From: Hemiscyllium ocellatum
Taxonomy: Eukaryota
NCBI RefSeq assembly: GCF_020745735.1
Contig: NC_083409.1
Coordinates: 5,755,534 to 5,819,533, forward strand
Direction of reading: 5' to 3'
Length of the DNA stretch: 64,000 nucleotides
Every line of letters begins with the position of its first letter. Position 1 is the stretch's first letter. The position numbers and the translations under genes are program-made. The notes under the pieces are model-generated. The model saw only the letters and a program-made list of their open reading frames with translations. It was not told where the DNA came from and made no database searches. Below are positions 2,589 to 35,138 of this stretch, piece by piece.

Positions 2589-2713
2589 GTTGACTCCATT
2601 CTCTGAAATGACATGAACAAGAGACAAGGCAAGAAGAAAGAATATAAGGACACCAGCAGTGACCGCCTGAAATCCATAAGAAGATTCACCCAGCACTTTA
2701 ATGAAAAGTAAAA
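2589..2713 (+). pseudogene. RNASEL: RNase L-like KEN exon, inactivated copy (arm A)
   Basis: 125 nt reading VDSIL*NDMNKRQGKKKEYKDTSSDRLKSIRRFTQHFNEK*; stops TGA 2604-2606 and TAA 2709-2711; acceptor altered; donor GTATGT at 2714 retained; homologous to 32016-32140. Confidence 0.8.
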
Positions 2714-3067: not shown

Positions 3068-3335
3068 GGGTGGCACAGTGTCTGGCGCCACTACCTGGGT
3101 TTGATTCCACCTTCAGGCAACAGTCTGTATTTAATTTGTATGTTCTCTCTGTGTCTGAATGGGTTTCCTTTTGGTTCCTCAGTTTCCTCTCTCAGTCTAG
3201 AGATGTGCAGGTTAGTTGGATTGGCCATGGAAGTGTAGGGTTAGGAGAGGGGGCTGGTTCTGGGTGAGATGCTACTTGTACTTGATGGGCTGAATGGCCT
3301 TCTTCCACACAGTAGGGATTTTATGATTCTATGTT
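3068..3335 (+). mobile_element. HE1/V-SINE-type tRNA-derived SINE (degenerate)
   Basis: gggtggcacagtg head and gggtttcctttggttcctcagtttcctc core; counterpart at 31485-31772. Confidence 0.75.
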
Positions 3336-3493
3336 GCTGTGGGTCTGAAGTCATATGTCAGTGGTATGGGAAAGGACAGCAATCTGATGGACATTAGTGG
3401 GCCCAACAGGGCTCGCCCCCAACACTGGTTGTCGTTAGACTCTTAACTCCAGAGTCTTTTTGAATTTAAAATTTCACTCCATACATTGCCAGG

Positions 3494-3806
3494 ATTTAGA
3501 TTAGATTCCCTATAGTATGGAAACAGGCCCTTAGGTCCAACAAGTCCACACCGACGCTCCGAAGAGTAACCCACCCAGACTCATTCCCCATATTCATCCC
3601 TGACTATGGACAATTTAACGTGACCAATTCACCTAACCTGCACATCTTTGGATGGTGGGAGGAGACCGGGGCACCCGGAGGAAACCCATGCAGACACAGG
3701 GAGAATGTGCAAACTCCATAAAAGTCAGTCACACGAGGCTAAAATCGAACCTAGGATTCTGGTGCTATGAGGCAGCAGAGCTTACCACTGTACCACCGTG
3801 CTGCCC
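3494..3806 (-). mobile_element. HE1/V-SINE-type SINE, arm-A-specific
   Basis: Near full length on the minus strand (gggcagcacggtggtacagtggtaagc...aatctaatctaaatc); no counterpart seen in arm B. Confidence 0.85.
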
Positions 3807-3974
3807 CACAGTGATCCCATCTTCCCCAGAACATTACTTGGTTCTTTGGATTAAGAATTTAGTGATGATAACATTTACTCATTGCCTCCCAACATGTGTA
3901 TTATCGCTATCTTGAATTTATTCAAACGCCTAAATATCGATGAGTATCACAAAGATTCAAAACCCTCCGAGTGA

Positions 3975-4215
3975 AGAAATCTTGGAATCGCTACAATGCG
4001 GAAACAGGCCATTCAGCCCAAACTGCCTCTCCCAGACCAACTCCCCTGTAGCCTTGCATTTCCCATGGCCATTCCTCCTAACCCGCACGTCTGTGGACTG
4101 TGGGAGGAAATCAGATCACCCGGAGGGAATCCAGGCACGCCCAGGGAGAACGTGCAAACTCCACACAGTCAGTTACTCAAGGGTGGAATAAAACTTTTGT
4201 CCCAGTGTTGTGCCA
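3975..4215 (-). mobile_element. HE1/V-SINE-type SINE (degenerate)
   Basis: gtggactgtgggagg...gtgcaaactccacacag core; counterpart at 30862-31140. Confidence 0.75.
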
Positions 4216-4239
4216 CCCCACTTGATTCTGGGCAATAAA

Positions 4240-4740
4240 TGCTGACATAGCAAATGATGCCCAATCCAGTAAATGAATTAAGAAAAGGTCAGTCAATTTT
4301 TGGATAGGACTGTGATGGGTTTCTCCCCACTTACCTGGATGGATGCAGCTCCAAAAACAATCAAGAAGCTTGATATCATCCAGTACAAAACAGCCTGCTT
4401 GATTGACACCACATCGATAAACATACACTCACTCCACCACTGATGCTCAATAACAGCCGTGTGCACCATCTACAAGATGCACTGCAGGAATTCACACCAA
4501 GTCTCTCGACACAGCACCTTCCAAACCCACGATCATTTCCATTAGAAGGGCACAGAACAATACTAAAAACAAGTTCCCCTCCAATGCGCATAGAATCTTG
4601 ATTTGAAAATATATTACTGTCCCTCCAGTGTCGCTGGGTGGAAATCCTGAAATTCCCTCCCTAAGGGCATTGTGGATTTATCTTCAGCACATGGACTGCA
4701 GTGGTTCAAGGAGGCAGCTCACCACCACCTTGCAAAGGGC
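4240..4740 (+). mobile_element. L2-like LINE 3' fragment
   Basis: gatgcagctcca...aagaagcttgatatcatccag...gcctgcttgattg family; relatives at 30330-30860, 38160-38520, 48040-48740 and 55290-55840. Confidence 0.55.
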
Positions 4741-4741
4741 A

Positions 4742-5075
4742 GGATCGTGGCTCAGTGGTTAGTGCTGTTTCCTCACAGCACTTGGGACCTGGGTTCAATT
4801 TCACCCTGAGACAACTGTATGTGTGGAATTTGCACATTTTTCCCATGTCTGTGTGGGTTTCTTCCACACAGTCCATAGATGTGTTGGTTAGTGGATTAGC
4901 CATGCCAAATTTCGCATAGTTTCGAGGGATGTGTTGTCTAGGTGGGTTGGCCATAGGAAATGCTACAGTACAGGAATAGTGTCAGTCGAGATGGAATGCT
5001 GTTCGGTGGGTTGATGTGGATTTGATGGGCTGAATGGTCTGCTTGTACACTGTATGATGATTCCATGATTCAGAA
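4742..5075 (+). mobile_element. HE1/V-SINE-type SINE
   Basis: gtggctcagtggttagtgctg head and tgtgtggaatttgcacatt core; counterpart at 29995-30328. Confidence 0.8.
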
Positions 5076-5159
5076 GGGCAATACAGAACGTGTAATAAAT
5101 GCTGGCCCAGACAGCAACACGCATGTCCTCAGAGTGAGTTTTAAACAAAAAGACCATCT

Positions 5160-6340
5160 TCAGTGCTTACTATTCCATCAGTCTTTGTGTCAATGTGGAA
5201 CTATGATTCTCATTAATGCATACAGTAAGTAGGTAAGGCCTCAGCACAGAATCCTTGTAGAAGACCACTCGTCACTTTCTTTCTATGTTGTCTGTCACTA
5301 AACCAGCCTCCGAACCAAGTCAAATATTCATCTTCAATCCAATGGGTTTTATTTTTAATCAGGAGACTGTATTGTGGAAAATTATCAAAAACATCTGAAA
5401 GTTGATGTAACTTTTTGCCCTATCGGCTATTTTAGTTTATGCATTTGGTTCGTTAGTCAGAACCTCCCATCACAAATGTATGTCGGCTATTTCCAATTCT
5501 CCACATGTTCATTGTATCGGCTGTTAATGATAGATTGCAATGAAACCCTCAAAAGAGATGTTGGATTGATCATTATATAATTTCCTCAGTTCCCTCTCTC
5601 ATTTTTCTTGAACCCGTGCAGTTACAGCAAGACATTTTCCAAACTAAAGGGATGGTTGCTGCTCTGGAAGCTGAAGAGAAAAGCTTCAGAAACTTTTCCC
5701 TCCTCCCCCTTCCTTAAAACCCCTGAGGTCCGGGAGATCTGTCAGCCTTTCGAGCTGCTCGCTTTCCAATGCTGTTTTCTGGCATGTATCAAGTTTCACG
5801 AATTCCAGTCTTCAATTCAGTATTAACCTCCCTGGAGTGGAAGCTGCATTATCCCATTCCTTGACGTGAAGGCTGACACAACTTATTCTTGTACATATCG
5901 GCCATTCCCTTAGTCTCATTTATGGAATTCCCAGTTAGTTTTTAAAGGGCTCGCATTGCACTGGAGCCCCCTTGATTCTCTAATTTTCGTGTAAAATATT
6001 TGTGTTATTCTTGTGACCCCTTCCAGGTCTCTTTATCCATCACTTTTTTGTAAGTCTTGCTTCCTTTTTGTCTTCCTTTGCAGTTCTTCATATCTTCCTT
6101 CAGTTGCCTGAATTTTCACTGATATTCCCGCGTTCGAGTGTTCTCATCTTTCTTTTTCTGTTTTGTCTCGCTTATTTTATCAGTGACAATGTGTTAACAA
6201 GTGGGGATCTGTTCCATACTGAGCTGAATTCATTTTTAACCATCTTCCCATCTCATTGGGAGTCTGATCTGACAATTTTGGCTGACAACAATTCCTGTTG
6301 CATTCTGTTTTCTGGTAGGTGGGTGTCACTGGCATAGATC
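5160..6340 (-). mobile_element. Old CR1-type RT fragment
   Basis: The minus strand gives degenerate W-K-x-A-x-V-T-x-x-F-K-K / NY-x-x-I-x-L-T-S sequence; counterpart at 28740-29920. Confidence 0.55.
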
Positions 6341-6564
6341 AGCATTTGTTACCCAAGACAAATTGTCCTTGAACTGCTGGTCTTTCTGTGGCCTCTCAGA
6401 AGGCACCTAAGATTTAAGCAGGTTGCTGTGGGGCTAGAGTCACATGAAGTCCAGACTAGGTAAGGCTGAGGCTGGGCAGCAATCAGGATCATTATCGTGG
6501 TCACCATTAATGAGGCTTGCTTTGTGATTTGTATTCAAATTCCAGCACTTGTCACTGGGGGAGA

Positions 6565-15661: not shown

Positions 15662-15984
15662 GCTATGAGAACTCTCAGTTGACCTTCCTGACCCCCTCTG
15701 CGCAGCAGGTAAATGCCAAGGGCACTGTCACCCTGGTGTGCCTTGCCAATCACTTCTACGCCGATGAGCTGGAGGTGCAGTGGAAGAAGGACGGTGCAGT
15801 CATTTCGGGCGGGGTTCAGACCAGCAACTACTTGCGAGCTTCGGACAGCACCTACAGTGTCAGCAGCCTGCTGACCCTCTCTGGGACTGACTGGAAGTCC
15901 AACGCTCGCTTCTGCTTTGCCCTCACCCAGGAGATCCTCCCCTCTCACCTCAGCAAGAGCATCAGGAGATCAGAATGTGTGTAG
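15662..15984 (+). pseudogene. IGKC: Immunoglobulin light-chain constant exon, kappa-type (shark type III/NS4-like); open frame but probably non-functional
   Basis: Acceptor tttctcttgtctttcag at 15645-15661, phase 1. Reads (x)YENSQLTFLTPSAQQVNAKGTVTLVCLANHFYADELEVQWKKDGAVISGGVQTSNYLRASDSTYSVSSLLTLSGTDWKSNARFCFALTQEILPSHLSKSIRRSECV*. First Cys, Trp and C-terminal Cys present; GVQTSNYLRASDSTYS matches the recalled shark kappa C. Confidence 0.9.
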
Positions 15985-19030: not shown

Positions 19031-19371
19031 GCGAGCAGGGCAGGATCATAGATCATAAAATTTATCGTGAAATTGAGACGGTAGCTGAGAAACGTGAATA
19101 CTGAGAGTATTTCACAGTTAGGGAGAGACTCCAGAGTCAGTGCACACTGTGTTCCCTAATGTGTTGCCCGATGACAAGGGGATTTTCTGGAGCCAGGGTC
19201 ATTGCAGTAGTGGCTGCCTACCCAGCTAATGCTGGTGAGCCACAGTCATATTTCAATGGTTAATTAGCCCTAAACTAAATGCAGCAATATCACCTTCCAG
19301 GGAGGGGAACTGTCTGAGGCAGGGAAGTTAAACTCCAGCAGTCCCAAGAGGCGCAAACTCACACATTCCTG

Positions 19372-19545
19372 AACACAATGGGCTATTTTAGTATGATCAA
19401 TTCACCTAACCTGCACGTGTTCGGAAACGCACAAAGACACAAGGAGAATGTGCAAACTGTACAGAAGTAGTCACCTGGGGCTGGAATCTACCCGAGTCCC
19501 TTGGGCTGTGAGGCAGCAGTGCTAACCACTGATCCACCTTTCCAC
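19372..19545 (-). mobile_element. HE1/V-SINE-type SINE fragment
   Basis: ttcacctaacctgcac...gagaatgtgcaaact...gtgaggcagcagtgctaaccactg. Confidence 0.75.
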
Positions 19546-19829
19546 CCTTTAAAAAAGCCCCAAAATTTGAGCTTTTGTTAATTTTGTTAATGTGAGCTTG
19601 AGGTGATATAAACTATAAACACACAACCCTATGCCAGGGAAGGTAGTGGAGGGTGGAACCTCACATTCTTTAAATAGAATAACATTCAACGATCTTGGAT
19701 AAGTGCAGCAAATTGGGATTAGGATGCTTTTCGTGGTAGCTATGTTTGTGCAGACTCAATGGGCCAAAGGTTGTATCAATCTATGCTCCATGCTGAGAGG
19801 ACAGTGCAAGATAATGGTGACTAGCTTAG

Positions 19830-20160
19830 GCTGTTCCAAGATGGCAAACTCATCATCAAGGGTCAGAGGAAATACTTCATTCTTCAGTGAAGGCCCAAGT
19901 CGGTGCTTGGAAGAAGGGTCAAGGCTAATGGACACAAGGTCAATGGATACTGAGCGAGGGCACAGGGTGCTGGCTGGCATCTCCAGGAGTTGTAATTAGG
20001 CATGTGGAGACAAGGGGGGAGTGTGTAAGGAGGGAGTGCACTTTCAGATGAAATGCGAACTCTGCCAGCAGCAATGTGACCTTCAGCACCAGAGGGTGTC
20101 CCAGACTGTCAGGCTCACTGGCGGCTCTTTGTGTGATTTTACACAACCACTTATCTGGTC
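19830..20160 (+). mobile_element. Possible PIF/Harbinger transposase relic
   Basis: Fragmentary motifs in order: FILQ, GDKG, LQHQRVSQTV, LCVILHN (cf. GDxGY ... LQYxPxRVSxIVxACCxLHN); frameshifted and shortened. Confidence 0.35.
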
Positions 20161-20419
20161 ACCATGCAAAGCCTTCCTCATGTCTATACTACCATCTACA
20201 CCACTGTCTGCACCCACTGTCTGCACCCAGCATCCACAACCCTGTCTGCACCCTCCACTTGCACATCCCATATTTCTGCTGTTGTATGATTGTATTCAAT
20301 AATTCCACGGAGAATACTGCAACAGAAATCTGAATTTCAGAATTGTCAATGATTATCTTCAAACCTTGACCTTCGAAGTCTGTGTTCCACAATGAGCTGA
20401 TTAATATTAATTACTGAAT

Positions 20420-20870
20420 GCCATTTGATTTCTGTGATGGCAGGCCTAACGTATAAGGAGAGGTTGAGGTGGTAAGGATTGTGTTCACTGGAGTTGAGAA
20501 GAATGAAGGAAGGGAATCTAGGAGAAAGCTATAAAATTGGAACCAGACAAGACAAATGGAGTTTGGATATTCCCAATGGTGAGAAGTTCAGAACCAGGCT
20601 TCATAGTGTAAGGTAGAGGGGTAAACCCTATAGGACACAGATGAGGAAAAATGTCTTCACCCAGAGAGTGGTGAGCCTGTAGAATTCTCTGTCACAGAAA
20701 ATGGTTGATGCCAAAATATTATGTTTTCAAGAAGGAGGTAGAGATAGCTCTTGTGGCTAAAAATTTAGGGATATGCGAGTAGAGAGGGACTACAGTATAG
20801 TGCTCAATGATCAGCCACAAACATTTTGGAGAGGCTGAATGGCTTACATCTTCTCCTATCCTCTATGTTT
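20420..20870 (+). mobile_element. CR1-type 3' fragment
   Basis: L-x-Y-K-E-R-L-x-x-x-G-L-x-S-L-E-x-R-R-like sequence and ttcacccagagagtggtgagcctg. Confidence 0.6.
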
Positions 20871-22727
20871 CTATGGAGCGTAAAATAGATTGCCAGATGG
20901 AGGTCAGCCTGTCAGATGTGTCAGTATCCATTCAAAGATTCCACCCACACCACAACCATTCCATTTTAATTGGGCCCACTCCCTCTCTTCCTACGTCTTT
21001 GTTATTTCACCAGTGACCACACCTCCCCACCACCACTTCCCACCCACTTCACCCCCTCCCAACTCTGGCAGGAGCTGTGCTTGTGACCCATTGTTTGTTT
21101 TATCTTACTAATTGGGTGATGTGATGGTGAGGCTTTCAAAGGCTGGAAGAGCTGAATTCTTATCGCCCCTTGTGTTGATTTTGTTGTGTGCCTCAATAAA
21201 AATATGGACGACATAACACGGCGCCTCACAGAGCCAGGAAGCCAGGTTCGAGAGTCATACAGCTCAGAAATAGGCCCTTCAGCCCACCATGTCAGTGCTG
21301 ACCAACAAACTACACTAATCCCATTTACGCGCAGTTGTCTGGCGCCTACTATGCCCTGGCATTACAATGGTCATCCAAATGTTTTTTAAAGATTGTGATA
21401 TTTTCAGCCTGCACCATCCTCTCAGGCAGCATGTTCGATATACCAACCACATGCTGGGTCAAAAAATACTTTCACCTGAATCTTATGACCTCTGGTCTTA
21501 AACAGGTCTGGGTGAGGATGGGAGGCTGCAGAACAGTGTGAGAGGTCAGCCGTGGAGAGAGGGAGAACAGTGTGAGAATGAGGGTGAGGAATCAAGTCTG
21601 CAGCAGGAAGATACATGTTTTCTGGAAAGCAGAACAACTAGGGCAGAGATCCAAGAGCTGGTAGGAATAGTTTCCATGCTTCCTAACAGTAGCTTTATGG
21701 TAGAAAAGAAAATAAATCAGGAGATAATGAGGTCTTGTAACAAAAGCTTCTAATTAATTACCAATAACTTTAATCTTAATGTCGATTATTTATTGTCAGA
21801 AATTTCTTTTTAATTCATTCAAAGGATGAGGGCATCACTGACTCGGACAGCATTTATTACCCACCCTAATTGCCCTAGAGGGCAGTTAACAGTCATTCAC
21901 ATTGCTCTAGGATTGGATTCCCATGTAAGCCAGACCAGGGAAGGATGGCAGTTCCCTTCCCTAAGGACATGATTGAACCAGATGAATTTTCCTGACAATC
22001 GACATGGATTAATAGCCATCGTTAGGCTCCTAATTGCACATTTTTAAAATTGATTTCAAATTCCCCCATCTGCCATGGTAGGATTTGCGCCTGTGACCCC
22101 GGAACCACATCTGGGTCTCTGTGCATTAATCGCAGGAGGTTAGTGTGTAGGTACAGCAATTAATCAGCAAAACTCATGGAATGTTATGGTGTGCTGTGAG
22201 CGGAAACTGAATGCAAGGCTTTATTGCAACATGCAAGATCCTGAGTGGCCTTGACTGGGTGGATGTGGAAAGGATGTTTCCTCTTGTTGGAGAATCCAGA
22301 CTAAGGATCACAGATTAAAAATTAAAGGAGAGTCCATTCAAAACAGAGATTCAGAAACATGTTTTTATTCTCAGGAATTGCCAGTCTTTGGAATTCCCTT
22401 CCTTAAAGGGCAGTGGATGCAGAATCTTTAAATATTTTTAAGGCAGAGTTAGATAGATTTTTGATGACTGAAGGGATGGAACATCATGGGATAATGTAGA
22501 GTTGAGGTTAAAATCATATCAACCATCGAAGGCTGTTGCTCATATTTTCTACCTGCAGATAAAGCTGCTTGTGCAATACGCCTCATCTGCACAGTGTTTT
22601 CTCCAGAGTTTCACAACGATATGTGAAAGATAGTGGCCTCCCAAACAATCCATTAACTCTGAATTGGTTTACTTAAACAATAAACACATTACAAGTAATG
22701 AAGCAGACATTACAGTAAGCAATAATG

Positions 22728-23035
22728 GGCAGCACAGACCTTCAACGGTTAGCACTGCTGCCTCACAGCGTGTGGGACCTGTGTTCAATTCCACCCTCAG
22801 GCGACTGTGTGTGGAGTTTGCACATTCTCGCTGGGTCTGTGTGGGGGTCCTCTGGGTACTCCAGTCTCCTCCCACAATCTAAAGATGTGCAGGTCAGGTG
22901 AATTGACCATGCTAAATTGGCCATGGTGTTTGGTGATGTGTGGGTAGGTGCAGTTGTCAGCGTAAATGTCGAGTAATAGGATGGGGGAATGGGATACTCT
23001 TTGGTGATTCGGTGTGGACATGTTGGGATTCTGTG
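22728..23035 (+). mobile_element. HE1/V-SINE-type SINE
   Basis: gttagcactgctgcctcacagcg...tgtgtggagtttgcacattctc...caggtcaggtgaattg. Confidence 0.85.
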
Positions 23036-23290
23036 AATTGATCTCTCTGTGCAGCTTGCAGGCTCACAGATGATTAACTGATAAGTGGATTTTCTCAAAA
23101 GCAATATGTTCACACACACACAGCCACTTAACATAAAGAGGAGATAGTTACATTCTCTTTTGTTGGAGACAGTCATTGGCTGGCAGTTGTGTGGCACAAA
23201 TGTAACCTTATTCATGTTCCAGGCCCACATCTCTGGCACTAAACTGCTTTGGAACATCCTCAGGTGATAAAAAAAATTGCCTTACATGTG

Positions 23291-23608
23291 GGTGCACGAT
23301 GGCTCAGTGGTTAGCACGGCTGCCTCACAGCATCAGGGACTCACCACAGGCAGGTCTGTGTTGAGTCTGCACATTCTCCCTGTGCCTGTGTGGGCTTCCC
23401 TGGGTGCTCTGGTTTCCTCCCATAGTCAAAAGATCTGCAGCCTCAGTAAATTGACAGTTCTAAATTGCCCATAGTGTCCAGGGATGTGCAGGCTAAGTGC
23501 ATTAGCCATTGGAAAATACAGGGGGCTGGGTGGAGTGCTCTTCAGTGGGGAAATGTGGACTTGATGGGCTGAATGGCCTACTTCCACACTATCGAGATTC
23601 TGTGATAC
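23291..23608 (+). mobile_element. HE1/V-SINE-type SINE
   Basis: ggctcagtggttagcacggctgcctcacagc head and conserved core. Confidence 0.8.
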
Positions 23609-23712
23609 AAATGCAAGTTCCTTCTTTCAATTCTAGCCCTGAAACATGCATGTGGTTCTGTCTCATATCCATTCAAGAGATGGCAACCCCATGAAGGCAG
23701 AAGCAACCTCTA

Positions 23713-23830
23713 TTATTTTGGAAGATACTTCTTCCACTCTGTGTCCTTCACAGGCTTGTAGACAGCAACAATGAGATCGGGAAATAACCCAAAGCTATAA
23801 TCTTCTGGACTCTTCATTAAACTGTGGAAC
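23713..23830 (-). CDS. RNASEL: RNase L-like terminal exon (C-terminal KEN helices), open; functional status uncertain
   Basis: Acceptor aattgttcttttcag, then one leftover G and FHSLMKSPEDYSFGLFPDLIVAVYKPVKDTEWKKYLPK* (TAA 23715-23713). Aligns with recalled human RNase L [37 protein letters not shown]. In frame with exon 32140-32016. Confidence 0.8.
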
Positions 23831-24199
23831 CTGAAAAGAACAATTAATGTCCAAGTCAATGAGGATATTTCTCAGCAATACCTAAATGCTGAGTTTTAGT
23901 ACTCAGCAGGCCCCAGAAGTCAAAATAACTGAGTAGACCATTGCTCTGAATTGTTCATACATGTTGCCTTCACATTTCTGGAGGCTATGATGAAAAAGGG
24001 TTGATTACTCCTCTCCAAAATACAGCTTAAAATCAACTCAAACACCCAACCATCCAGCTGAGAGCGGAGCCCTGTACTAACTGGAACCTGGTCAGTGTGA
24101 GCACTGTCACCTCTGTCTCAGAAGCTTTGCCTATTTAAACCAGAAACTTAGTCTGAGAGTCTTTCGGCACAGAAACCGTTCCCTTGGTTCAACGCATCC

Positions 24200-24690
24200 A
24201 TGCTAACCAGTTATTCTAAATTAATCGAGTCCCATTTGCCAGTCATTGGTTCATATCCCTCTGAATCCTTTCTATTCATATAGCCATCCAGATGCCTTTT
24301 AAATGCAGTAAGTCTAATAGCGTCCACCATTTCCTCTGGCAGCTCAATCCATGCATGCACCACCTTCTGCATGAAAAAGTTGTGTCTTAGATCCCTACCG
24401 TTTGCTTCCTCTCTCACCTTAAACCTATGCCCTCTAGTTGTGGACTTACAAACCCTGGGAAAAAGATCTTGGCTATTCACCTTATCGAAGCCCCTAATGA
24501 TGTTATAAACCTCTATAAATTCACCCATCAGCCTCCACCGCTCAGAGGAAAATAACCCCAGTATATTAAGCCTCTCCCTACAGCTCAAATCCTCCAACCC
24601 CGGCTACACTGTTACAACTCTTTTTTGCCCCTTTCAAGTTGAACAACATTGTTCCTGTTGCAAGAAGACCAGAACAGAGCTCTGTATTCT
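24200..24690 (-). mobile_element. CR1-type 3' fragment
   Basis: ORF 24211-24597: EDLSCRERLNILGLFSSE...TRGHRFKV...WIELPEE. Confidence 0.85.
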
Positions 24691-24699
24691 CAAGGTGTG

Positions 24700-27600
24700 C
24701 TCACCAATGGCCACTTTGGGGTCAGCCAGAACATGGCAGCCAGAACTCTCTCATTTTGTGGGAACGAGAGAGACTCACGATTGATGTGTTAACTCCCAAG
24801 TTCCAGAGTTTGTGAAGTCTCTGATCATGTTTTTGGGATCCTTGAGGGGGAGGGGGAGCAGCCCCAAGTCATAGTCCACAGAGGCACCAACCACATAGGT
24901 AGGAAGAAAGCTGTGGGATTTAAGTCAGAAATTCAGGGAACTAGGGTAGAAGCTTAGAGGTAGAAGAAACAGAGTTGTTACTTCTGGTTTCTTGCCCTTG
25001 CGACGTGCTCGTGAAGAGCAGAGCTGCAGGGGTGGTGCAGGAGGGGAGGCTTTGGATTCTTGGATAATTGGAGCTAATTCTGGGTAAATTGGGACCTCTA
25101 CCAACAGGATGGTCTTCACCTGAACCAGAGGGGTCCCGATATCCTAGGGGTTAGAATTTGATAATGCTCTTCGGGGGAGTTTAAACTAATGTTGCAGACG
25201 GGTGGGAACCTGAATTGTAGTCCCAGTGTACAGGAGGTTGAGGGTCGTGAGATCAGGAATAGGTTTACAAGGTTGCGAGAGGGCACCAGCAATCAGGGTG
25301 TTGGTTTGAAATGTGTGTGCTCCAACGCCAAGAGCATCCAGAATAAGGTGGGTGAACTTGCAGCATGGATTGTTCCCTGGGATTTCATACTGTGGCCATT
25401 TCAGAGACATGGTTAGAGGACGGTTAGAAATGGTTGTTGCATGTTCCGAGATTTAGATGTTTAAGCCATGATGGTAACAGAGGAAGGGGTGTGGCATTGT
25501 TGATCATGGGTTGTATTACAGCAGCTGAGATAACATGTGAGGACTCATCCACAGAGGTAGCTTGGGCTGATGTTAGAAACAGGAAAGGTAAGGTCACCCT
25601 ATTGAAAGTTTTCCATAGACCTCCAAATTGTTCCACGTATGTAGTGGAAAGGGTGGCCAAGAAGATTCTCGGTAGGAGTGAGTTTAACAGGGTAGTTGTT
25701 ATGGGGGACTTTAACTTCCCCAACATTGACAGGGAATACTATAATTCAAGTAGTTTAGATGGGTAAATTTTTGTTCAATGTGTAGATGAGGGTTTTATGA
25801 ACACAGTATATAGACAGGCCAATAATGGGTGATGCCATATTGGATTTGGTACTGGGGAATGAACCCGGTCAGGTGTTAGAATTGGAGGTAAGGGAGCATT
25901 TTGGCGCTAGTCACCACATTTCAGTTATGGTTAAAATGCCAATGGGCAGGGATAGGTGTATATTGCAGGGAAAGATGTATAACTGGGGAAAAGGCAATTA
26001 TGATGTGATTAGGCAAGATGTAGGATACATTGGATGGGGAAGTAAACTGCAGGGGATGGACATACTTGAAAATTGGAGCTTATTCAAGGAACAGCTATTG
26101 TGCGTCATTGATAAGTATATACCTTTCAGTCAGGGAGGTAGTTGTCGAGAGAGGAAACTATGGTTTACTAAAGAAGTTGAAGCTCTTGTCACGAGGGGTA
26201 AGGTGGCTTATGTGAGGATGAGGCGTGAACACTCAATTAAGGGGCTTGAGAGTTAGAAGTTAGCCAAAAAGATCTAAAGACGGGTCTGAGAAGAGCCAGG
26301 AGGGAACATGAGAAATTGTTGGCAGATAGGATGAAGGAAGACGGGAAGGCCTTCCATAGGTGTATCAGGAATAAAAGAATGATCCGAGTAAGATTGGAGC
26401 CAATCAAAGATAGTAGTGGGAAGTTGTGTGTGGAAGCTGAGGATATTGGGGAAGCGCTCAATGAATACTTATCATCAGCATTCACATGGGAAAAGGGCAA
26501 TGTTACTGAGAATAGGGAGTTACAGCGTACTAGATTAGATGGAATTGTGGTTGACAACAAGGAGGTTTCCGCAATGTTGGAAGATCTGAAAACAAATAAG
26601 ACCTCTGGGCCGGATAGGATTTACCTCGGATTTTCTGTGAAGCCAGGAGGAGATTGCAGAGGCTTTGACTTTGATCTTTACGCCATCATTGTGGATAGGA
26701 ATTATGCCAGAAGATTGGAGAATGACAAACGTTGTTCCCTTGTATAGCAAGGGGAGTTTAATAATTATATGCCAGCGAGCCTTACTTTGGTTGTGGGTAA
26801 GGCGTTGGAACAGATTACAAGAGATAGGATTTATAATCATCAGGATTTATAGTCAACACGGATTTTTGAAGGATAGGTCATGCCTAACTAACCTTATTGA
26901 GTCCTTTGACAAGGTGACAAAAAGAGTGAATGAAGGTAAAATGGTTCTTGTGGTGTATGTGGACTTCAGTAAGGCATTTTATAAGGTTCCATACGATAGG
27001 CTATTTCACAAAATACGGAGCTTCAGGATTGATGGTGATTTAATGAATTGGATCAGAAATTGTCAAGCTAAAAGAAGACAGAGGGTGGTTGTTGATGGGA
27101 AATGTTCATCCTGGAGCTTAGTAACCGGTGGTGTGCTGCAATGTTCTATATGGAGGCCACTGCTGTTTGTCAGTTTGATAAATGATCTGGATCTGGGTAT
27201 AGAAGGATGGGTTAATAACTTTGCGGATGACACTAAGGTAGGCAGAGTTGTAGATAGTGCCAAAGCATGATGTGGGTTACAGAGGGACATAGATAAGATG
27301 CAGAGCTGTGTTGAGAAGTGGCAAATTGAATTTAATGCAGAAAAGTGTTAGGTAGTTCACTTCGAAAGAGATAACAGGAATGCAGAGTACGGGGGTGATG
27401 GTAAAATTCCTAGCAGTGTATATGAAAAGAGCAATCTCGATGACCAGGTGCATAAATCGCTGAAGGTTACCACCCAGGTTGATACGGTTGTTAAGAAGGG
27501 ACATGGTGGGCTGGTGTTTATTGGTAGGGGGATTAAATTTCGGAGCCACGATGTCATGTTTCAGCTGTATAAGACATTGGTCAGTCCACACCTGGAGTAT

Positions 27601-27750
27601 TGCATACAGTTCTTGTCATCACATTATAGGAAGGAGGTGGAAGCTTTGGAAAAAATTCAGAGGAGATTTGAAAGGATGTTGCATGGTATGGCGGGAAGGT
27701 CTTTCGAGGAAAGGCTGAGGGAACTGAGGCTGTTTTCATTGGAGAGATGA
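24700..27750 (+). mobile_element. CR1-type LINE (ORF1 remnant + ORF2 endonuclease/RT), frameshifted; antisense in the RNase L-like intron
   Basis: LKCVCSNAKSIQNKVGELAAWI, MGDFNFPNID, ILDLVLGNEPGQV, FADDTK, LVSPHLEYC. Confidence 0.9.
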
Positions 27751-27869
27751 AGGCTGATTTGTCCCTTAGCAAAATGAAAAGCCTGACAATTATCTAAATA
27801 AACCCCATCTCCCACTCCTTGCCCATTGGTCATTTGATCAAGCTTTGATCGTATATTATAAACCTAAGC

Positions 27870-28440
27870 ATCTATAAGGCATTTGTTTGACCACATCTGG
27901 GGGATTGTCTCTCCTTGTTTGAGGAAAGATGTAGTGGCACTGGAGGCTGTTCAGAGGATGTTCACCAGACTGATTCCAGAGATGAAATGGCTGTCCTACG
28001 AGGAGCAGGTAAAGAGCTTGGGCTTGTACTCGCAGGATTTCAAAAGAATGAGGAGAGATCGGATGGAGGGAGAGAAAAAATGTGAAAGGAGATTGATAAG
28101 GTGGACTTTGAATGGATGCTCCCCTTTGTGGGACAGTCTAGAACAAGAGATCATCAATATAGAGTGAGGGGAGTTGGGTTCAAATCCAAGATGATGAGAA
28201 ACTACATCTCCCAGAGGGTTGTGAATCTGTGGAACTCAATTCCCCAGAGTGCAGTGGAGGCAGAATCAAACAACACGTTCAAGAAAGATGTGTTTATGAT
28301 GAAAAGTGTGATAAAGAGCGATGGGGAGCAGGCGGGAGAGTGGAGTTGAGACCAGGATAAGATCAGCCACGGTCATGTTAAATGGCGGAGCGGGGTCGAA
28401 GTGCTGAATTGCCCCCTCCCGCTTCTAATTCATATGTTGA
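27870..28440 (+). mobile_element. CR1-type 3' fragment
   Basis: LRKDVVALEAVQRMFTRLIPEMKWLSYEE and QRVVNLWNSIPQ. Confidence 0.8.
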
Positions 28441-29994
28441 GCACACAGTCAAGGCTGACACTGCAAAACTGTGGGACCTGTTGTCTTTCAGGTGAGATAC
28501 AAAACAGGGTCCTGCCACAATACATCGAACTGCATTACTTCCCCCAGTGACAAGTGCTGGAATTTGAAATCAAATCACAAAGCAAGCCTTATTAATTGTG
28601 ACCACGATAATGGGCCCTGATTGCTGTCCAGCCTCAGCCTTACCCAGTCTGAGTAATGTGACTCCAGCCTCTTCTGAAAAGCCACAGCAAGGCGAAAAGT
28701 TCAAGGGCAATTAGCCTTGTGTAACAAATACTGATCTGTGCTAGTTACACCCACCTCCCAGAAAACAGAATGCAACAGAGATTGGTGTCAGCCAAAATTG
28801 TCAGATCAGACTCCAAATGTGATGGGGAAATGTTTAAAAATGAATTCAGCTCAGTACGGGACATGTCCCTACTTGTTCATTCATCATCACTGACAAAATA
28901 AGTGAGAGAAAGCAGAAAACTAAAGGCGAGAACACTCAAATGTGGGAATATCAGTGAGAATTCAGGCAACGGAAGGAAAATATGAAGAACTGCAAAGGCA
29001 GACAAAAAAGAAGTTACAGGAAGTGATGGATAAAGAGACCTGCAAGGGGTCACAAGAATAACAAAAATGTTATACACGAAAATTAAAAAAATCAAGGGGG
29101 CTCCAGTGCAATGTGAGCCCTTTAAAAACAAACTGGGAATTCCATGAATGAGACTAGGGGAATGGCTGATATGTACAACAATTAGTTGTGTCAGTTTTCA
29201 CAGTCAAGGAATGGGATAATGCAGCTTCCATTCCAGGAAGGTTAGTAATGAATTGAAGATTGAAATTCGCAAGACTTGATAAGTGCCAGAAAACAGCATT
29301 GGAAAGCGAGCAGCTCTAAATGTTGACAGATCTCGAGGACCTCAGGGGTTTAAAGGAAGGGGAGGTTGAAGTTTCAGAAGCTTTTCCCATCAGGTTCCAT
29401 AGCAGCAACCATTCCTTTACTTTAGAAATTATCCTGCTGTAACCCTACGCGTTCAAGAAAGATGAGAGAGGGAACTGAAGAAATTATATAATGATCAATC
29501 TAACATCTCTTTTGAGGATTTCATTGCAATATATCATTAACAGCCGAGAGAATGAACATATAGAGAATTGGAAATAACCCTCATAGATCTGTGACGGCTA
29601 GGTTCTGACTAACAACGCAAATGCATTAAATAAAGTAGTTGATCTGACTTAAAGGCTTATTTACTTTCAAAAGAACGAGCTAATCTTCCACAAAACAGGA
29701 TGCTGACCAAAGCTAAAATCCATGAGGGTGAAGATCAATGTTTGACTTTGTCCAGAGGCTGGGTTAGTGACAGACAGCAGAGAAAGAAAGTGACGAGTGG
29801 TGTTCCACAAGGATTCTGTGGTCAGGCCTTAACTACCTATTGTATGTATTAATGAAAATCATAGTTCCAGATTGACACAAAGACTGATGGAATAGTAAGA
29901 GGTGAAGATGGTGTTTTTGTTTAAAATTCACTCTGAGGACATGCGTGTTGCTGTCTGGGCCAGCATTTATTGCACATTCCTAGTTGCCCTTGAG

Positions 29995-30328
29995 AATCAT
30001 AGAATCATTGTATGTTGTGGAAGCAGGCCATTCAGTCGATCAACTTCATACCAATCCACCAAACAGCGTTCCATCTAGATAAGCCCCATTCCTGTAATGC
30101 TGCACTTCCCATGTCTATTTCCACCCTGCCTGCACATCCCTGGATACGACGTGCAATTTAGCATGTCTAATCCACCAACCTAAACATCTGTGGATTGCGT
30201 GGAGGAAACTCACTCAGACATCGGGAAAATATACAAACTCCACACAGACAGTTGTCCCAGGATGGATTTGAACCCAGGTCCCTGCCGTTGTGAGGGAGCA
30301 GCATTAACCACTGACCCACAATGCTGCC
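29995..30328 (-). mobile_element. HE1/V-SINE-type SINE (counterpart of 4742-5075)
   Basis: caaactccacacagacag...cagcattaaccactgacccac. Confidence 0.75.
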
Positions 30329-30861
30329 CTTTGCAAGGTGGTGGTGAGCTGTCTTCTTGAACCGCTGCAGTCCATGTGCTGTAGATCAACCCACAATTCC
30401 CCACAGGAGGGAAGTCCAGGATTTTGACCCTGCGACCCTGAAGGAACAATAATATATTTTCAAATCAGGATGCTATGTAGATTAGAGTGGAACATATAGG
30501 TGGCTGGTGTTCTGTGTATCTGCCTCCCTTGTCCTTCTAGATGGAAATGGTCGCGGGTTTGGAAGGTGCTGTCTCATGAGACTTGGTGAATTCTTGCAGT
30601 GCATCTTGTTGATTGTGCACACCGTTGCTGCTGAGTATTGGTGGAGGAGGGAATGAATGTTTGTACATATTGTACTAATCAAGCAGGCTGCTTTGTACTG
30701 GATGATATCAAGATTCTTGACTGTATTTGGAGCTGCACCCATCGAGGCATGTGGGGAGTGATCCATCACATTCCTATCCAAAGCTTGACTGATCTTTTTA
30801 AAATTCATTTACAGGATTGGGCATCACATGGTATGCCAACATTTCTTGCCCTAAATCACGT

Positions 30862-31140
30862 GGGGTGGCATAGAGACTAGCACTGCTGCCTCACAGCGCA
30901 GGGTCCTGAGTTTGATTCCACCCTTGGGCAGCTGTTTTTGTGACGTTTACACATTCTGGCTGTGCCTGCTTGGGTTCCCTCCAGGTGCACTGGTTTCCTC
31001 CCACAGTCCAAACATTGTGTGATAGGTGGAATGGCCATTGGAAATACATGGTAAAAGAGGAGTGGGTCTGGGTTGGATGCATTTTGAAGAGGCGATATGG
31101 GCTGAATGACCTGTTTCCACATTGTCGGGATTCTATTGAT
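30862..31140 (+). mobile_element. HE1/V-SINE-type SINE (counterpart of 3975-4215)
   Basis: tagcactgctgcctcacagcg...ggtttcctcccacagtccaaa. Confidence 0.78.
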
Positions 31141-31484
31141 TTCTTCACTCAGAGAGTGATGAATTTTTGGAACACTCATCCCAAGGTATTTAGTCGATAC
31201 TTAGTCATTTGAAAAAAATCAAGATAGAGATCACCCACGTGTGGGGAGGCAATGGCCTAGTGGTATCATCACGTAATTTTTAATCCAGCCAGCCAAGTCA
31301 TGTTCTCGGGGACCTGAGTTGAAATCCTAACAAAGGCACGGAGTGGAATTTAAATTTTAAAAACCCTCAAATTAAGTGTCTAATGATGACAATTGTTTGG
31401 GCAGAGTCCCGTCGAACCCATTCATGTCCTTTAGCCCGCTGTCATACTAACTGACATATCACTCCAGACCCACAGCAATGAAGA

Positions 31485-31772
31485 ATCATCAAATCCCGAC
31501 TGTGTGGAAGAAGGCTGTTCAGCCCATCAAGGCAAAGCAGCATCTCACCCGCGGCCACCTCCCTCTCCTATCCCTGGAGCCTTACACTCCCCATGGCCGA
31601 TCTACTTAACCTGCACATGTTTGGGCTGAGAGAGGAACCACCCCCCCCCCCCACCCCGCAGACATGAATCCAGGGGAGAACATGAAAATTCCACGCAGAC
31701 AGTTGCCTGAGGGTGGAATCGAACGCAGATCCCTCGTATTGTCTGGCAGTGGTGCTAGCCACTGTGATACCC
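31485..31772 (-). mobile_element. HE1/V-SINE-type SINE (counterpart of 3068-3335)
   Basis: acttaacctgcacatgttt...gacagttgcctgagggtggaatcgaac. Confidence 0.72.
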
Positions 31773-32015
31773 ATTCCATACTGGAGATTGAAACGTCTAA
31801 CCCGTTATTCCCAGACTGGGACTCTGCTTTAGAATTCCCAAGTAGATTCTTCCAAAGTCTACCCTGCCAACCCGTCACATGAACTGTTGCTCGGTTTCAT
31901 CATCTCAGTAAGAGTTTTAAGGAGGGAAGGAGAAAGAAAGACTATTTTCTGCTTTGAGTCAATGCTAAAAGTTGAAAACGCTGGAAAATATTGCCACCAA
32001 CTATTGTTCACATAC

Positions 32016-32140
32016 TCTTTCTGTTCATCAAAGTGCTGGATGAGGTTCCTTATGCATTTCAGGAGGTCACTGGTGGTGTCCTTATATTCTTTATTCTTGT
32101 CTTGTCTCTTGTTAGTGTCATTTAGGAGAACAGAGTCAAC
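32016..32140 (-). CDS. RNASEL: RNase L-like KEN (ribonuclease) exon, open with canonical splice sites; functional status uncertain
   Basis: Acceptor ttcatttccttctag, 125 nt (phase 0 to phase 2), donor GTATGT. Reads VDSVLLNDTNKRQDKNKEYKDTTSDLLKCIRNLIQHFDEQK(E); cf. recalled human [23 protein letters not shown]. Confidence 0.85.
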
Positions 32141-32929
32141 CTAGAAGGAAATGAACAACAGAGTTTGTTTTCTCTGTTGCTTGAATTCACCTTGCTTGCT
32201 CCACTGATCACCTGAAGAAGGGGCGAGGCTTGTGTCCTGTAATAAACCTGTTGCACTATAACCTGGTGTCGTATGATTTTTGACCTTGGGGATTCCTGGA
32301 TACAAGGTGTTCAGTAAAGATAGGAAAGAGGGAAAACTGGGAGAAGTGGTGGGATGTTCTGGAGCCAGACAGTGCTGACCAACCTTAGGCCCTGAGATAT
32401 GATGGAGATGAAGGGTGAACTCTGCTGGGCTTTAACTCAGTGTAACCAGAGTAAAACAGGGATTATCCATTTCACACGAAAGGAAATGGAACTAACAAAC
32501 CAGGTACGTGTGAAACACACATTTTGTCCCCGAAGGTTGGGGAGGGGGTGAGGGATCAAGAACGGGCACACTCTCAGATGGAAAGGATGCTAAAAACGGC
32601 ATCACCTCCAGAGTGAAGGGTGGTGTGGCATAGTGACAGCGATACCCCCCAGAGAATGGGGAAAGAAACACTGACACATTTAAAACTGTATTGTCACAAG
32701 TGAGAATTCAAACAGCCACTCATTCCGTCATACGGCGTTGAATGATGCAGTGTCCTCATCAAAGCATGTTTGCAAAACTCGTCGTAACACATAAGGGGAG
32801 AGAAACATCGAAAATTGTATTTTCACCAGTGAGAGTCCATTTAAAACTTGGACCATGATGTTAAATGTTCCCAGTCTTAAACAATACAGGTGTATTTACA
32901 TCATTATTCTTATTAAACAATATTAAAAC

Positions 32930-33070
32930 ATCGGCCAAATATTTTCCTGCACACAGTGTATTTAAACTATCGAGAAGTTTTCTGCATTGCTTGTTTGATC
33001 AGTGACGTAGCAAGGAAGCAGCAGCTGCCCCATGAACTCCAACAAAAGAATGAGAACAGGCTCTTCATCC
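32930..33070 (-). pseudogene. Degenerate RNase L/IRE1-like kinase-to-KEN linker exon relic (arm B)
   Basis: With frameshifts reads H-S-F-x-W-S-S-W-G-S-C-C-F-L-A-x-V-T-D-Q-T-S-N-A-E-[fs]-K-L-L-D-S-L-N-T-L-C-A-G-K-Y-L-A-D. W-to-VxD spacing equals that in IRE1/RNase L. No clear donor. Confidence 0.4.
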
Positions 33071-33119
33071 GGAGTTTACTCCCGAGAATCCAATTCAACA
33101 GCAGGGATCAAAGAACAAG

Positions 33120-34250
33120 GAACAATACAACACAGGAACAGGCCATTCGACCCTACAAGGCTCTGCTGACACATTTTGCCCTTCCATACTGAAACTACCT
33201 ATTCCCTTCCTATTCATGCATTAATGCAGGTATATCTTGAATACTTATATTGTGTCTGCTTCCACCCCGTCTTCTGGCAGTGTGTTCCAGGCACTCAACT
33301 TCCTTTGTGTGAAATACTAACCTCGCACATCTCTTTTAAATTCCCCCCTCCCCCCGCACCTTGAACCTCTGTCCCCGAGTAAGTGACCCCTCCATCCTGG
33401 GAAAAAGCCTCATATTTTCCATTGTACCTATTCCATTCAAAACTTAATAAACTTCTATCAGGTCACACCTAATTTTCCCTCACTCTGGTGAAAACAACCG
33501 CCGTCTCTCCAACCTTTATTCAGAACTAAAATCCCCCATACCAGACAATATCCAGGTAAAGATTTTCTGCACCATCTTCAAAACATCCACGTCCTTCAGA
33601 TGGTGTGGTGACCAGAACTCTCTACAATATTCCAAGTGTGGCCGAACTAATGTTCGATAAAGCTGCAGCATAACTTGTCTATCCTTATACTCAATGCCCT
33701 TTCCAATGAAGGCAAGCAGGCCATACCTCACTGTGCTTCCACCTTCAGTGATCTGTGAACTACACATCCAGATGCCTCTGCATATCAATACTCCAAATGA
33801 TTCTGCCATTCAATGTATAATTCCCACCTGTACATCACTTTCAAAGTGCATCACCTCACATTTGTCTGGATTAAACTACATCTGCCATTTTTCTGTCCAT
33901 GCATCCAACTGATCTATATCCTGCTGTATCCTCTGACAATCCTTCTCATTATCTCTACCTCTCTGTCAATCTTTGTATCAACTGTACACTTTTTAATTAG
34001 ACTAGCTACACTTTCCTCCAAATCATTTATGTACACCATATACAGCAGAGTTCCCACCACTGATCCCTGTGGGACACTAGGAATCACAACCCTCCATTCT
34101 GAATACCATACTCCCATCACTGCCCCCGTCTCCTCTGTCTCAGCCAGTTCTGTATCAAATGGTGTGAACATTTTAGACAAGACACCTTGTCGCCAGATCC
34201 TTACTGCAACTTGATCCAGTTCATTCAGAAAGACAAAGTACAAATTGCAG
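33120..34250 (-). mobile_element. CR1-type LINE 3' fragment (counterpart of 60-1170)
   Basis: VPQGSVVGTLLYMVYINDLE and QLYRTLVRPHLEYC on the minus strand. Confidence 0.85.
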
Positions 34251-35138
34251 ATTGGAGAACTGGCCCCTACACCTGGGACAGAGGCAGGGGCCCAACCTCA
34301 AACACACTGGCCTCACTTCACACCAAACTTCACACAGAGTGAGGTCATGCCCTCCAGCCATCAATTCCTCTGGGACTGGGACGGAGTGAGTGAATAGGGA
34401 CAATGTCAAAGAGTCAATAAAGAGTAAAACAAGATGGAGAGATTGTGTTGGAAAGTGCTTGATGTAGGAAACATTCTTTGTGATACACAATACTGACATA
34501 ATCCATGCTTATCACAGAATGAACAAAATAGCACACCGTGAAGACAATCAAAAGTCTCATCAAAGCGCTTTGTTTTTGAAAATCTATAGCATGCAGGACT
34601 TCTTCATTGTGGTGTGATCAGTATCACGGTCCGAAGATCTTCGCAGAGCCCCAGTTTGTTTGTACTGTTCAGTAATGGGGGGATACCGATGGGGGCGCTG
34701 GGGTAATCTTGATGAAGGAGCAATGCGTTGAAAACTTGTGATTTCAAATGAACCTGTTGGGCTAGACCCTGGTGTTGTGTGACTTCCGACTTTGTATTGT
34801 TTGGGCACAGTGAAATAGTTGCCTTCGCATAACTATAGAGTACTTGCATTGCAACTGCGGATTATGGGTAACGACTCCATCCATTGGCCATGTACAAACC
34901 CGTCGTCACTCCAGTGGATTCCAACCTGTCAGTTGCTTCCGAGATCTTACTTGATTCACCACCACTCTCTCCAGGGCAATTAGGGAAGGGCAACAAATAA
35001 CCAACACAACAACGCCCACCCCATCTCAGGAGATATCAAAATAAATGGCATATAATTCAAATGATCAAACTGGTGAGGCTTGAATTCATCTCTTTGAAAG
35101 ACTGGAGTCTCGGCCAGAAATAGAGCCATGACATGAGT

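What the first reader, a model, noticed from the sequence alone, without database searches (positions are those of the whole stretch)
23713..32140. RNase L-like KEN nuclease gene in a shark: two open, correctly phased exons missed by the ORF track
Seen: minus-strand exons 32140-32016 (AG...GT, phase 0 to 2) and 23830-23713 (AG, phase 2, TAA) splice across an 8.2-kb intron into VDSVLLNDTNKRQDKNKEYKDTTSDLLKCIRNLIQHFDEQKEFHSLMKSPEDYSFGLFPDLIVAVYKPVKDTEWKKYLPK*. Known: human RNase L has [19 protein letters not shown], with D661, R667 and catalytic H672, followed by ...[25 protein letters not shown]. As I recall, its last two introns are phase 0 and phase 2, as here. The FPDL..TE.+K tail resembles RNase L more than IRE1. 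Inference: this is an RNase L-family (2-5A antiviral effector) locus or paralog in a cartilaginous fish, relevant to the origin of the OAS/RNase L system. Whether it is functional is open.
Basis: partly seen in the sequence, partly recalled or inferred. Interest (0 to 1): 0.85.

Follow-up and report, generated by a model that had tools for sequence, protein, structure and literature searches.

The report
Dead RNase L gene tail fragment
The two exons are real and come from the shark antiviral RNase L gene, but only its last two exons are here, drifting without selection beside an antibody light-chain exon, so this is an ordinary dead gene fragment and not a new RNase L gene.

Summary
Minus-strand exons 32140-32016 and 23830-23713 have AG/GT/AG signals and phases 0 and 2. 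It is 91-92% identical to the last 80 residues of the annotated RNase L-like proteins of Chiloscyllium and Hemiscyllium. It sits inside that clade (support 100/97), not with IRE-type proteins.

It is not a gene. No ankyrin, pseudokinase or first-third KEN exon lies anywhere in the 64 kb, although the whole gene spans 20-33 kb in those relatives. Similarity to the Chiloscyllium punctatum gene stops about 240 bp upstream of the penultimate exon. It stops at the same point in a second, inverted copy (window 1-6562). That copy's exon (2589-2712) carries two stops.

The open copy has replaced residues that are invariant from chimaera to mammals (M9T, F29C, F78L; also K40Q). A G-to-T change ends its frame one codon early. 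Its exons change about as fast as their intron flanks.

RNase L in cartilaginous fish has been published since 2007 and was tested functionally in 2023.

Earlier notes of this scan list at least 12 similar tails among Ig light-chain clusters on the same chromosome. One follow-up reached the same verdict. Interest is low.

The parts
32016..32140 (-). Copy A, penultimate RNase L coding exon (125 nt, phase 0 to 2). It encodes peptide residues 1-42, including the D25...R31-N32...H36 catalytic motif. It contains no Met codon.
   Evidence: Same boundaries as L001 37398-37522.
23713..23830 (-). Copy A, last RNase L coding exon with its TAA stop. A G-to-T change (GAA to TAA) ends the frame one codon earlier than in the orthologs.
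23831..32015 (-). Last intron of copy A (8.2 kb), swollen by LINE fragments on the + strand, for example the reverse-transcriptase ORF at 26665-27267. Both ends are homologous to the C. punctatum intron.
   Evidence: RVT_1, E = 7e-11; 30726-31869 matches L001 38966-37822; 23831-24462 lies within the match to L001 44198-42275.
32141..32378 (-). Remnant of RNase L intron 5, carrying a deletion of about 460 bp relative to copy B and C. punctatum. Similarity to the parent gene ends at 32378.
32379..34311 (-). Sequence unrelated to C. punctatum intron 5 (it includes a LINE fragment). It is shared by copies A and B beyond the common breakpoint.
   Evidence: A 34311-32287 matches B 1-1993 at 79%; no trace of exon E or its flanks.
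19138..23712 (-). 3' flank of copy A, homologous to the 3' flank of the C. punctatum RNase L-like gene up to the end of that contig.
   Evidence: 22525-24462 matches L001 44198-42275 at 80%; 19356-20824 matches 45869-44358 at 75%; 19138-19351 matches 50766-50553.
1..6562 (+). Copy B, an inverted and degenerate duplicate of the same tail. It is cut off by the window start and has no last exon.
   Evidence: matches A 34311-28540 at 79-83%, one 568-bp stretch at 70%; 1923-4356 matches L001 36712-38967.
2589..2712 (+). Copy B pseudo-exon. The acceptor AG is displaced by 1 nt. There are in-frame TGA (2604-2606) and TAA (2709-2711) stops. The catalytic N is replaced by R.
15679..15984 (+). Ig light-chain constant (C1-set) exon, convergent with copy A and 7.7 kb beyond its stop codon.
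   Evidence: (PF07654 C1-set, E = 6.9e-16).

Best explanation
This is a truncated, non-functional copy of the 3' end of the shark RNase L (2-5A-dependent ribonuclease) gene.

Shown:
- A genomic segment was copied. It runs from the middle of intron 5 through the last two coding exons and several kb of 3' flank.
- The window holds two such copies, in inverted orientation.
- Copy A keeps its splice sites, its reading frame and the catalytic D/R/N/H motif. Copy B has decayed.
- The fragment encodes only the last 80 of about 122 residues of the KEN nuclease domain. It lacks the ankyrin repeats that bind 2-5A and the pseudokinase domain needed for dimerisation. It has no start codon of its own.
- Its sequence changes at about the neutral rate.

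Inferred:
- It cannot act as RNase L. Its open frame is simply what survives after about ten neutral substitutions.
- The segment was probably copied together with the neighbouring Ig light-chain sequence.
For: 1. Identity of the exons.
- The peptide is 91-92% identical to the last 80 aa of the RNase L-like proteins of Chiloscyllium punctatum, C. plagiosum and Hemiscyllium ocellatum.
- DNA similarity to the C. punctatum gene runs through introns and the 3' flank.
- In the tree the peptide falls inside the hemiscylliid RNase L clade with support 100/97.

2. The rest of the gene is missing.
- tblastn with 11 RNase L proteins and the profile HMM find only the two exons and the copy B pseudo-exon in the 64 kb.
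- The whole gene spans 20.6 kb in H. ocellatum, 25.3 and 33 kb in two C. punctatum assemblies, and 25.9 kb in C. plagiosum.
- Intron 5 is 1.7 kb in C. punctatum. Here 31.9 kb upstream of the exon hold no exon E.

3. The truncation point is shared.
- Copies A and B stop matching C. punctatum intron 5 at L001 36692 and 36712.
- They go on matching each other for 2 kb beyond that point.

4. Constraint is relaxed on copy A.
- Its private replacements are M9T (M in 30 of 30 orthologs), F29C (F in 29 of 30, inside the DLLKFIRNL motif), K40Q (K in 27 of 30), F78L (F in 30 of 30) and A68P. A nonsense change removes the last codon.
- Its end branch in the tree is 0.087, against 0-0.014 for the orthologs.
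- In exon F, polarised with copy B, copy A has 7 private nucleotide changes (one of them at a site where all three differ) and C. punctatum has 1.
- Exon identity to C. punctatum is 93.6-94.8%, against 90-91% in the adjacent intron. That fits neutral drift on the A lineage: about 15 differences expected, 14 seen. About 8 would be expected if both lineages were constrained.

5. An open frame is not evidence of function.
- Only 5% of single-base changes in this sequence make a stop. The chance of staying free of stops after 10-12 substitutions is 0.54-0.60.

6. Leads only, not checked by me.
- Earlier notes of the scan list at least 12 such tails among Ig light-chain clusters on this chromosome.
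Against: - Both exons of copy A are intact. Splice signals are conserved and all four catalytic residues are kept.
- Pairwise dN/dS against C. punctatum is 0.24. One of the two lineages in that comparison is the constrained functional gene.
- DNA beyond position 64000 cannot be seen. Upstream exons behind an intron longer than 31.9 kb are not strictly excluded. The Heterodontus gene spans 50.6 kb.
- The counts behind the rate arguments are small (14 differences in 240 nt).
- No transcript data were available.
Confidence: 0.82

Rival explanations
1. These are the true last two exons of an intact RNase L gene, or of a full-length paralog. Its upstream exons lie beyond the window, behind a greatly expanded intron 5. 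Copy B is then a partial duplicate of that gene.
For: - The frame is open, the splice sites are intact and the catalytic motif is kept.
- The 3' flank is collinear with that of the C. punctatum gene.
- Shark introns can be long. The last intron here is 8.2 kb, and the Heterodontus gene spans 50.6 kb.
Against: - Intron 5 would have to be more than 31.9 kb, against 1.7 kb in C. punctatum.
- Residues invariant in 29-30 of 30 RNase L proteins are replaced.
- The end branch is at least six times longer than in the orthologs.
- The exon changes at about the rate of its intron flanks.
- Earlier notes of the scan report many similar tails in this genome (unchecked).
Confidence: 0.07
2. The tail has been put to another use. 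It could be spliced into another transcript of the Ig light-chain region. It could be made as a non-coding or antisense RNA. It could serve as a donor in gene conversion with the functional RNase L gene.
For: - The splice signals are preserved.
- Several copies exist.
- Identity to the parent gene is higher close to the exons (about 90%) than further into the introns and flank (74.8-85.5%). Occasional gene conversion could produce that pattern.
Against: - No upstream exon, promoter or transcript evidence is available.
- The protein-level changes look unconstrained.
- Copy B is plainly decayed.
- Higher identity near exons is also expected from conserved splicing elements.
Confidence: 0.06
3. 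It belongs to IRE1/ERN or another KEN-domain kinase family, not to RNase L.
For: The KEN domain is shared by IRE1 and RNase L. Exon 1 alone scores just under the Pfam cutoff.
Against: - The PDB searches find only RNase L and no IRE1 chain.
- The peptide is 91-92% identical to shark proteins with the ankyrin, kinase and KEN architecture.
- It lies deep inside the RNase L clade, away from the IRE2-like outgroup.
- Intron-level DNA similarity to the RNase L-like gene is present.
Confidence: 0.01

Closest known systems
2-5A-dependent ribonuclease-like (RNase L) genes of hemiscylliid sharks: Chiloscyllium punctatum XP_072429488, C. plagiosum XP_043555869, Hemiscyllium ocellatum XP_060686052
   Same: - The last two coding exons have identical boundaries and phases.
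- Amino-acid identity is 91-92%.
- Introns and the 3' flank are 74.8-91% identical at the DNA level.
- The catalytic D/R/N/H residues are kept.
   Different: - Exons for residues 1-792 are absent. These encode the ankyrin repeats, the pseudokinase domain and the first 42 residues of the KEN domain.
- Four residues that are invariant or nearly so are replaced.
- The stop codon comes one codon early.
- The last intron is enlarged by LINE insertions.
Duplicated (non-processed) pseudogene fragments carried along in segmental duplications
   Same: - Introns and flanks were copied along with the exons.
- There are several copies with a shared breakpoint.
- The sequence drifts neutrally, and one copy carries stops.
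   Different: Copy A happens to keep an open, correctly phased two-exon frame.
IRE1/ERN1 KEN domain
   Same: It has the same fold family (Pfam PF06479) and the same catalytic R-N...H arrangement.
   Different: The PDB searches give no IRE1 hit. The tree and the intron-level DNA similarity place the sequence in RNase L.

Membership tests
RNase L (2-5A-dependent ribonuclease) | C-terminal KEN / Ribonuc_2-5A nuclease domain (Pfam PF06479) | tested here: inconclusive
   Only the C-terminal part is present. The peptide corresponds to residues 793-872 of P0018, whose domain spans 751-872. Exon 1 alone covers profile positions 45-79 of 127 at 22.5 bits, under the 23.3-bit cutoff. The first 42 residues of the domain are missing.
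RNase L (2-5A-dependent ribonuclease) | Catalytic residues equivalent to human D661, R667 and H672. R667A and H672N appear as RNase L mutants in PMC3973342 and bioRxiv 10.1101/2020.09.10.291690; that they are nuclease-dead is from my own knowledge, as those papers were not read here. | tested here: met
   D25, R31, N32 and H36 are present with the right spacing. The neighbouring F, found in 29 of 30 orthologs, is replaced by C.
RNase L (2-5A-dependent ribonuclease) | Pseudokinase domain upstream of the KEN domain | tested here: not met
   There is no hit in 64 kb on either strand with tblastn or with the profile HMM.
RNase L (2-5A-dependent ribonuclease) | N-terminal ankyrin repeats that bind 2-5A | tested here: not met
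   There is no hit in 64 kb. In relatives the large ankyrin exon lies 13-14 kb upstream of the penultimate exon.
RNase L (2-5A-dependent ribonuclease) | Descent from the RNase L gene, shown by phylogeny and by similarity of non-coding DNA | tested here: met
   It falls inside the hemiscylliid RNase L clade with support 100/97. Intron and flank DNA match the C. punctatum gene.
RNase L (2-5A-dependent ribonuclease) | Purifying selection typical of the family | tested here: not met
   Residues that are invariant or nearly so are replaced (M9T, F29C, K40Q, F78L). The last codon is lost to a nonsense change. The exon changes at about the intron rate on this lineage.
RNase L (2-5A-dependent ribonuclease) | Expression and 2-5A-dependent RNA cleavage | not testable with these tools
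   No transcript data or assay was available.
IRE1/ERN kinase-endoribonucleases | KEN domain closest to IRE1, with a luminal sensor and an active kinase domain | tested here: not met
   The PDB searches give no IRE1 hit. The tree separates the sequence from the IRE2-like outgroup.

The most novel reading that the evidence does not exclude
RNASEL sat tail-to-tail with a kappa-type Ig light-chain cluster in an ancestor of this shark. Its last two exons were then carried along each time the cluster was amplified. The many tails, some still open like this one, would act as more than debris. They could be gene-conversion donors that vary the KEN domain of the working RNase L gene. They could also be exons or antisense RNAs within light-chain-region transcripts.
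Probability: 0.05. Interest if true: 0.5.

Novelty: already known. Interest (0 to 1): 0.13.

Why it matters
It matters little for the biology of RNase L. The gene is known, annotated and functionally tested in cartilaginous fish, and this copy is a dead fragment.

It has two modest uses.
- It is a clear example of an open, correctly phased exon pair with an intact catalytic motif that is still non-functional. That is a caution for annotation.
- The RNase L tail, with its shared breakpoint, is a convenient marker for tracing how the Ig light-chain clusters of this shark were duplicated. It hints that RNASEL lay next to that array in the ancestor.

Tried and rejected
- The ESM Atlas search with exon 1 gave no usable hit (best score 0.66, no family).
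- Regex and ORF-by-eye hunts for upstream kinase or KEN exons on the minus strand turned up only chance matches. One was HP..FFW at 43026-42856, which has no Pfam hit.
- DNA of the chromosome-level RNase L loci of C. punctatum, C. plagiosum, H. ocellatum and Heterodontus could not be fetched because the files are too large. Synonymous changes could therefore be polarised only for exon F, using copy B.
- I tried to identify the species from the Ig C exon. The search returned only fish-like Ig fragments filed under bacterial assemblies.
- I looked for the Ig C exon in the C. punctatum locus L001. The contig ends about 3 kb short of where it would be. The claim that the parent gene abuts a light-chain cluster therefore remains an inference.
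- No V or J segment and no recombination signal sequence was found in the window by simple motifs.
- The spliced 80-aa peptide was not sent to Pfam or to the large protein searches, because it has no single reference. The exons were searched separately and the joined peptide was used only in scripts.
- The search of earlier findings by sequence returned nothing.
Full report
**Observation**

The two minus-strand exons are as described.
- Exon 32140-32016 is 125 nt long. It follows a pyrimidine tract and an AG. That AG is part of an in-frame TAG, so the exon cannot extend upstream. It ends before GTATGT.
- Exon 23830-23713 is 118 nt long. It follows TTTTCAG and ends in TAA.

Each exon, searched alone against all PDB chains, has pig and human RNase L as its best hits, at adjacent collinear positions (4o1o residues 640-670 and 676-711). 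No IRE1 chain appears. Exon 1 alone hits Pfam Ribonuc_2-5A at E = 1.3e-4 and 22.5 bits, against a cutoff of 23.3.

**What it derives from**

A search of 1.84 billion representative proteins with exon 1 returned an 811-aa protein of Mustelus asterias, named '2-5A-dependent ribonuclease-like'. Follow-up searches listed full-length proteins with ankyrin, kinase and KEN domains in more than 15 chondrichthyans.

The window peptide is 91-92% identical to the last 80 residues of the proteins of Chiloscyllium punctatum, C. plagiosum and Hemiscyllium ocellatum. In a maximum-likelihood tree of KEN regions it falls inside that hemiscylliid clade with support 100/97. It lies far from an IRE2-like outgroup and from a teleost KEN-repeat protein.

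The C. punctatum locus L001 (contig BEZZ01001581) has seven coding exons. The window's two exons have exactly the boundaries of its penultimate exon (37398-37522) and last exon (from 42896). DNA similarity of 74.8-91% runs through the last intron and at least 4.6 kb of 3' flank. The family assignment is therefore right, and IRE1 is excluded.

**It is only a tail**

Two searches looked for the rest of the gene. One was tblastn with 11 RNase L proteins. The other was a profile HMM of 16 chondrichthyan RNase L proteins, run with filters off against all 2,814 ORFs of at least 15 aa. Both find three things only: the two exons, and a degenerate copy of the penultimate exon on the plus strand at 2589-2712. 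There is no ankyrin, pseudokinase or first-third KEN exon on either strand.

The whole gene is compact in the close relatives.
- H. ocellatum: 20.6 kb.
- C. punctatum: 25.3 kb and 33 kb in two assemblies.
- C. plagiosum: 25.9 kb.

Intron 5 is 1.7 kb in C. punctatum. Here the 31.9 kb upstream of the exon contain no trace of exon E or its flanks, even with 7-base words.

Pfam places the KEN domain of the C. punctatum protein at residues 751-872 and the kinase domain at 510-742. The window therefore encodes only the last 80 of about 122 KEN residues.

**Shared breakpoint**

Similarity to C. punctatum intron 5 ends at window 32378, which corresponds to L001 36692. A second copy (B) lies on the plus strand at 1-6562. 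It matches L001 from 36712 onward. It matches copy A from 34311 down to 28540 at 79-83% identity (one 568-bp stretch at 70%).

Beyond the common breakpoint, A and B stay alike for 2 kb, while C. punctatum is unrelated there (alignments A1 and A2). The simplest reading is that both copies descend from one already truncated segment.

Copy B's exon is dead.
- Its acceptor is displaced by one base.
- It has in-frame TGA and TAA stops.
- The catalytic N is replaced by R.
- It has no last exon.

Copy A is convergent with an Ig light-chain C1-set exon at 15679-15984. Earlier notes of this scan place at least 12 similar RNase L tails among Ig light-chain clusters on the same chromosome. One follow-up (s1-228427) called its copy a dead tail fragment. 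I treat these as leads. My window independently shows two copies with one breakpoint.

**Is copy A under selection?**

Six amino-acid differences separate it from all three hemiscylliid proteins. A seventh, S49N, is private to C. punctatum. Against 30 RNase L proteins from chimaera to mammals, the window's residues depart from conserved positions.
- M9T: M in 30 of 30.
- F29C: F in 29 of 30, inside the DLLKFIRNL catalytic motif.
- K40Q: K in 27 of 30.
- F78L: F in 30 of 30.
- A68P: P is seen in no ortholog.

A G-to-T change (GAA to TAA) ends the frame one codon early. The end branch in the tree is 0.087, against 0-0.014 for the orthologs.

In exon F, with copy B used to polarise changes, copy A has 7 private nucleotide changes (one of them at a site where all three differ). 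These amount to 4 amino-acid changes and 2 synonymous changes. C. punctatum has 1.

Exon identity to C. punctatum is 93.6-94.8%, against 90-91% in the adjacent 150-200 bp of intron. If copy A drifted neutrally and only the C. punctatum gene were constrained, about 15 differences in 240 nt would be expected. About 8 would be expected if both were constrained. Fourteen are seen.

The pairwise dN/dS of 0.24 therefore reflects the constrained partner and shared history.

Only 5% of single-base changes in this sequence create a stop. An open frame after 10-12 substitutions has a probability of 0.54-0.60. The open frame is not evidence of function. Exon 1 contains no Met codon.

**Mechanism**

The fragment lacks three things an RNase L needs:
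- the ankyrin sensor for 2-5A;
- the pseudokinase dimerisation module;
- the first third of the nuclease domain.

It cannot work as a 2-5A-activated nuclease. Most likely it does nothing.

Two alternatives cannot be strictly excluded without DNA beyond the window or transcript data. I rate them at about 7% and 6%.
- A giant intron 5 hides the rest of an intact gene.
- The tail is used in another transcript or in gene conversion.

**Novelty**

RNase L and OAS in a cartilaginous fish were reported in 2007 (PMC1845163). A 2023 study found RNase L in all major jawed-vertebrate lineages except ray-finned fishes. It also showed that Callorhinchus milii OASa and RNase L work together in yeast (PMC10400998).

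**An unexplained detail**

In three-way alignments of about 1,500 non-coding and exon columns, the C. punctatum gene has 55 private changes. Copy A has 158 and copy B has 123. The two tails have therefore changed about 2-3 times faster than the parent locus, or they have exchanged sequence with other diverged tails. I did not resolve this.

Noticed in passing
window 15679-15984 (+): Ig light-chain constant exon (Pfam C1-set, E = 6.9e-16), convergent with the RNase L tail. Simple motif scans found no V segment, J segment or recombination signal sequence anywhere in the window.
   Followed up: partly
window 1-6562 and 28540-34311, against L001 36692-38967: In three-way alignments the C. punctatum RNase L locus has 55 private changes. 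The two window tails have 158 and 123. The tails seem to evolve 2-3 times faster than the parent locus, or they exchange sequence with other copies. This is unexplained.
   Followed up: partly
window 16381-17705; L001 47271-49923: Tandem retrotransposon-end repeats lie downstream of the Ig C exon. They are 80-94% identical to a repeat stack in the 3' flank of the C. punctatum RNase L-like gene.
   Followed up: no
protein P0001 (Larimichthys crocea TMS01848.1, 449 aa): This teleost protein is made of three tandem copies of a segment resembling the KEN C-terminal part (motifs LLRFIRNL..H and FPDLF). It was hit by exon 1 at E = 6.7e-6. Teleosts are reported to lack RNase L, so this KEN-repeat protein is odd.
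   Followed up: no
proteins P0072 and P0073: Ig C1-set proteins 71-72% identical to the shark C exon are filed under Aeromonas veronii and Salmonella enterica, on contigs of 507 and 990 bp. This is almost certainly fish DNA contaminating bacterial assemblies.
   Followed up: no
window 24167-28167, 6989-10067, 33444-34243, 47045-48031: LINE fragments: reverse-transcriptase ORFs with Pfam RVT_1 hits at 26665-27267 and 9225-10064, plus similar stretches without a Pfam hit. They fill the last intron and the sequence upstream of the tail.
   Followed up: partly
window 60356-60562 (-) and 42856-43026 (-): Two exon-like ORFs upstream of the tail. One is a coiled-coil segment with a weak, sub-threshold PRP9_N hit (E = 0.002). 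The other has no Pfam hit. No gene could be assigned to either.
   Followed up: partly
window 50534-50642: A 42-bp tandem repeat, 2.5 copies, 80% matches.
   Followed up: no
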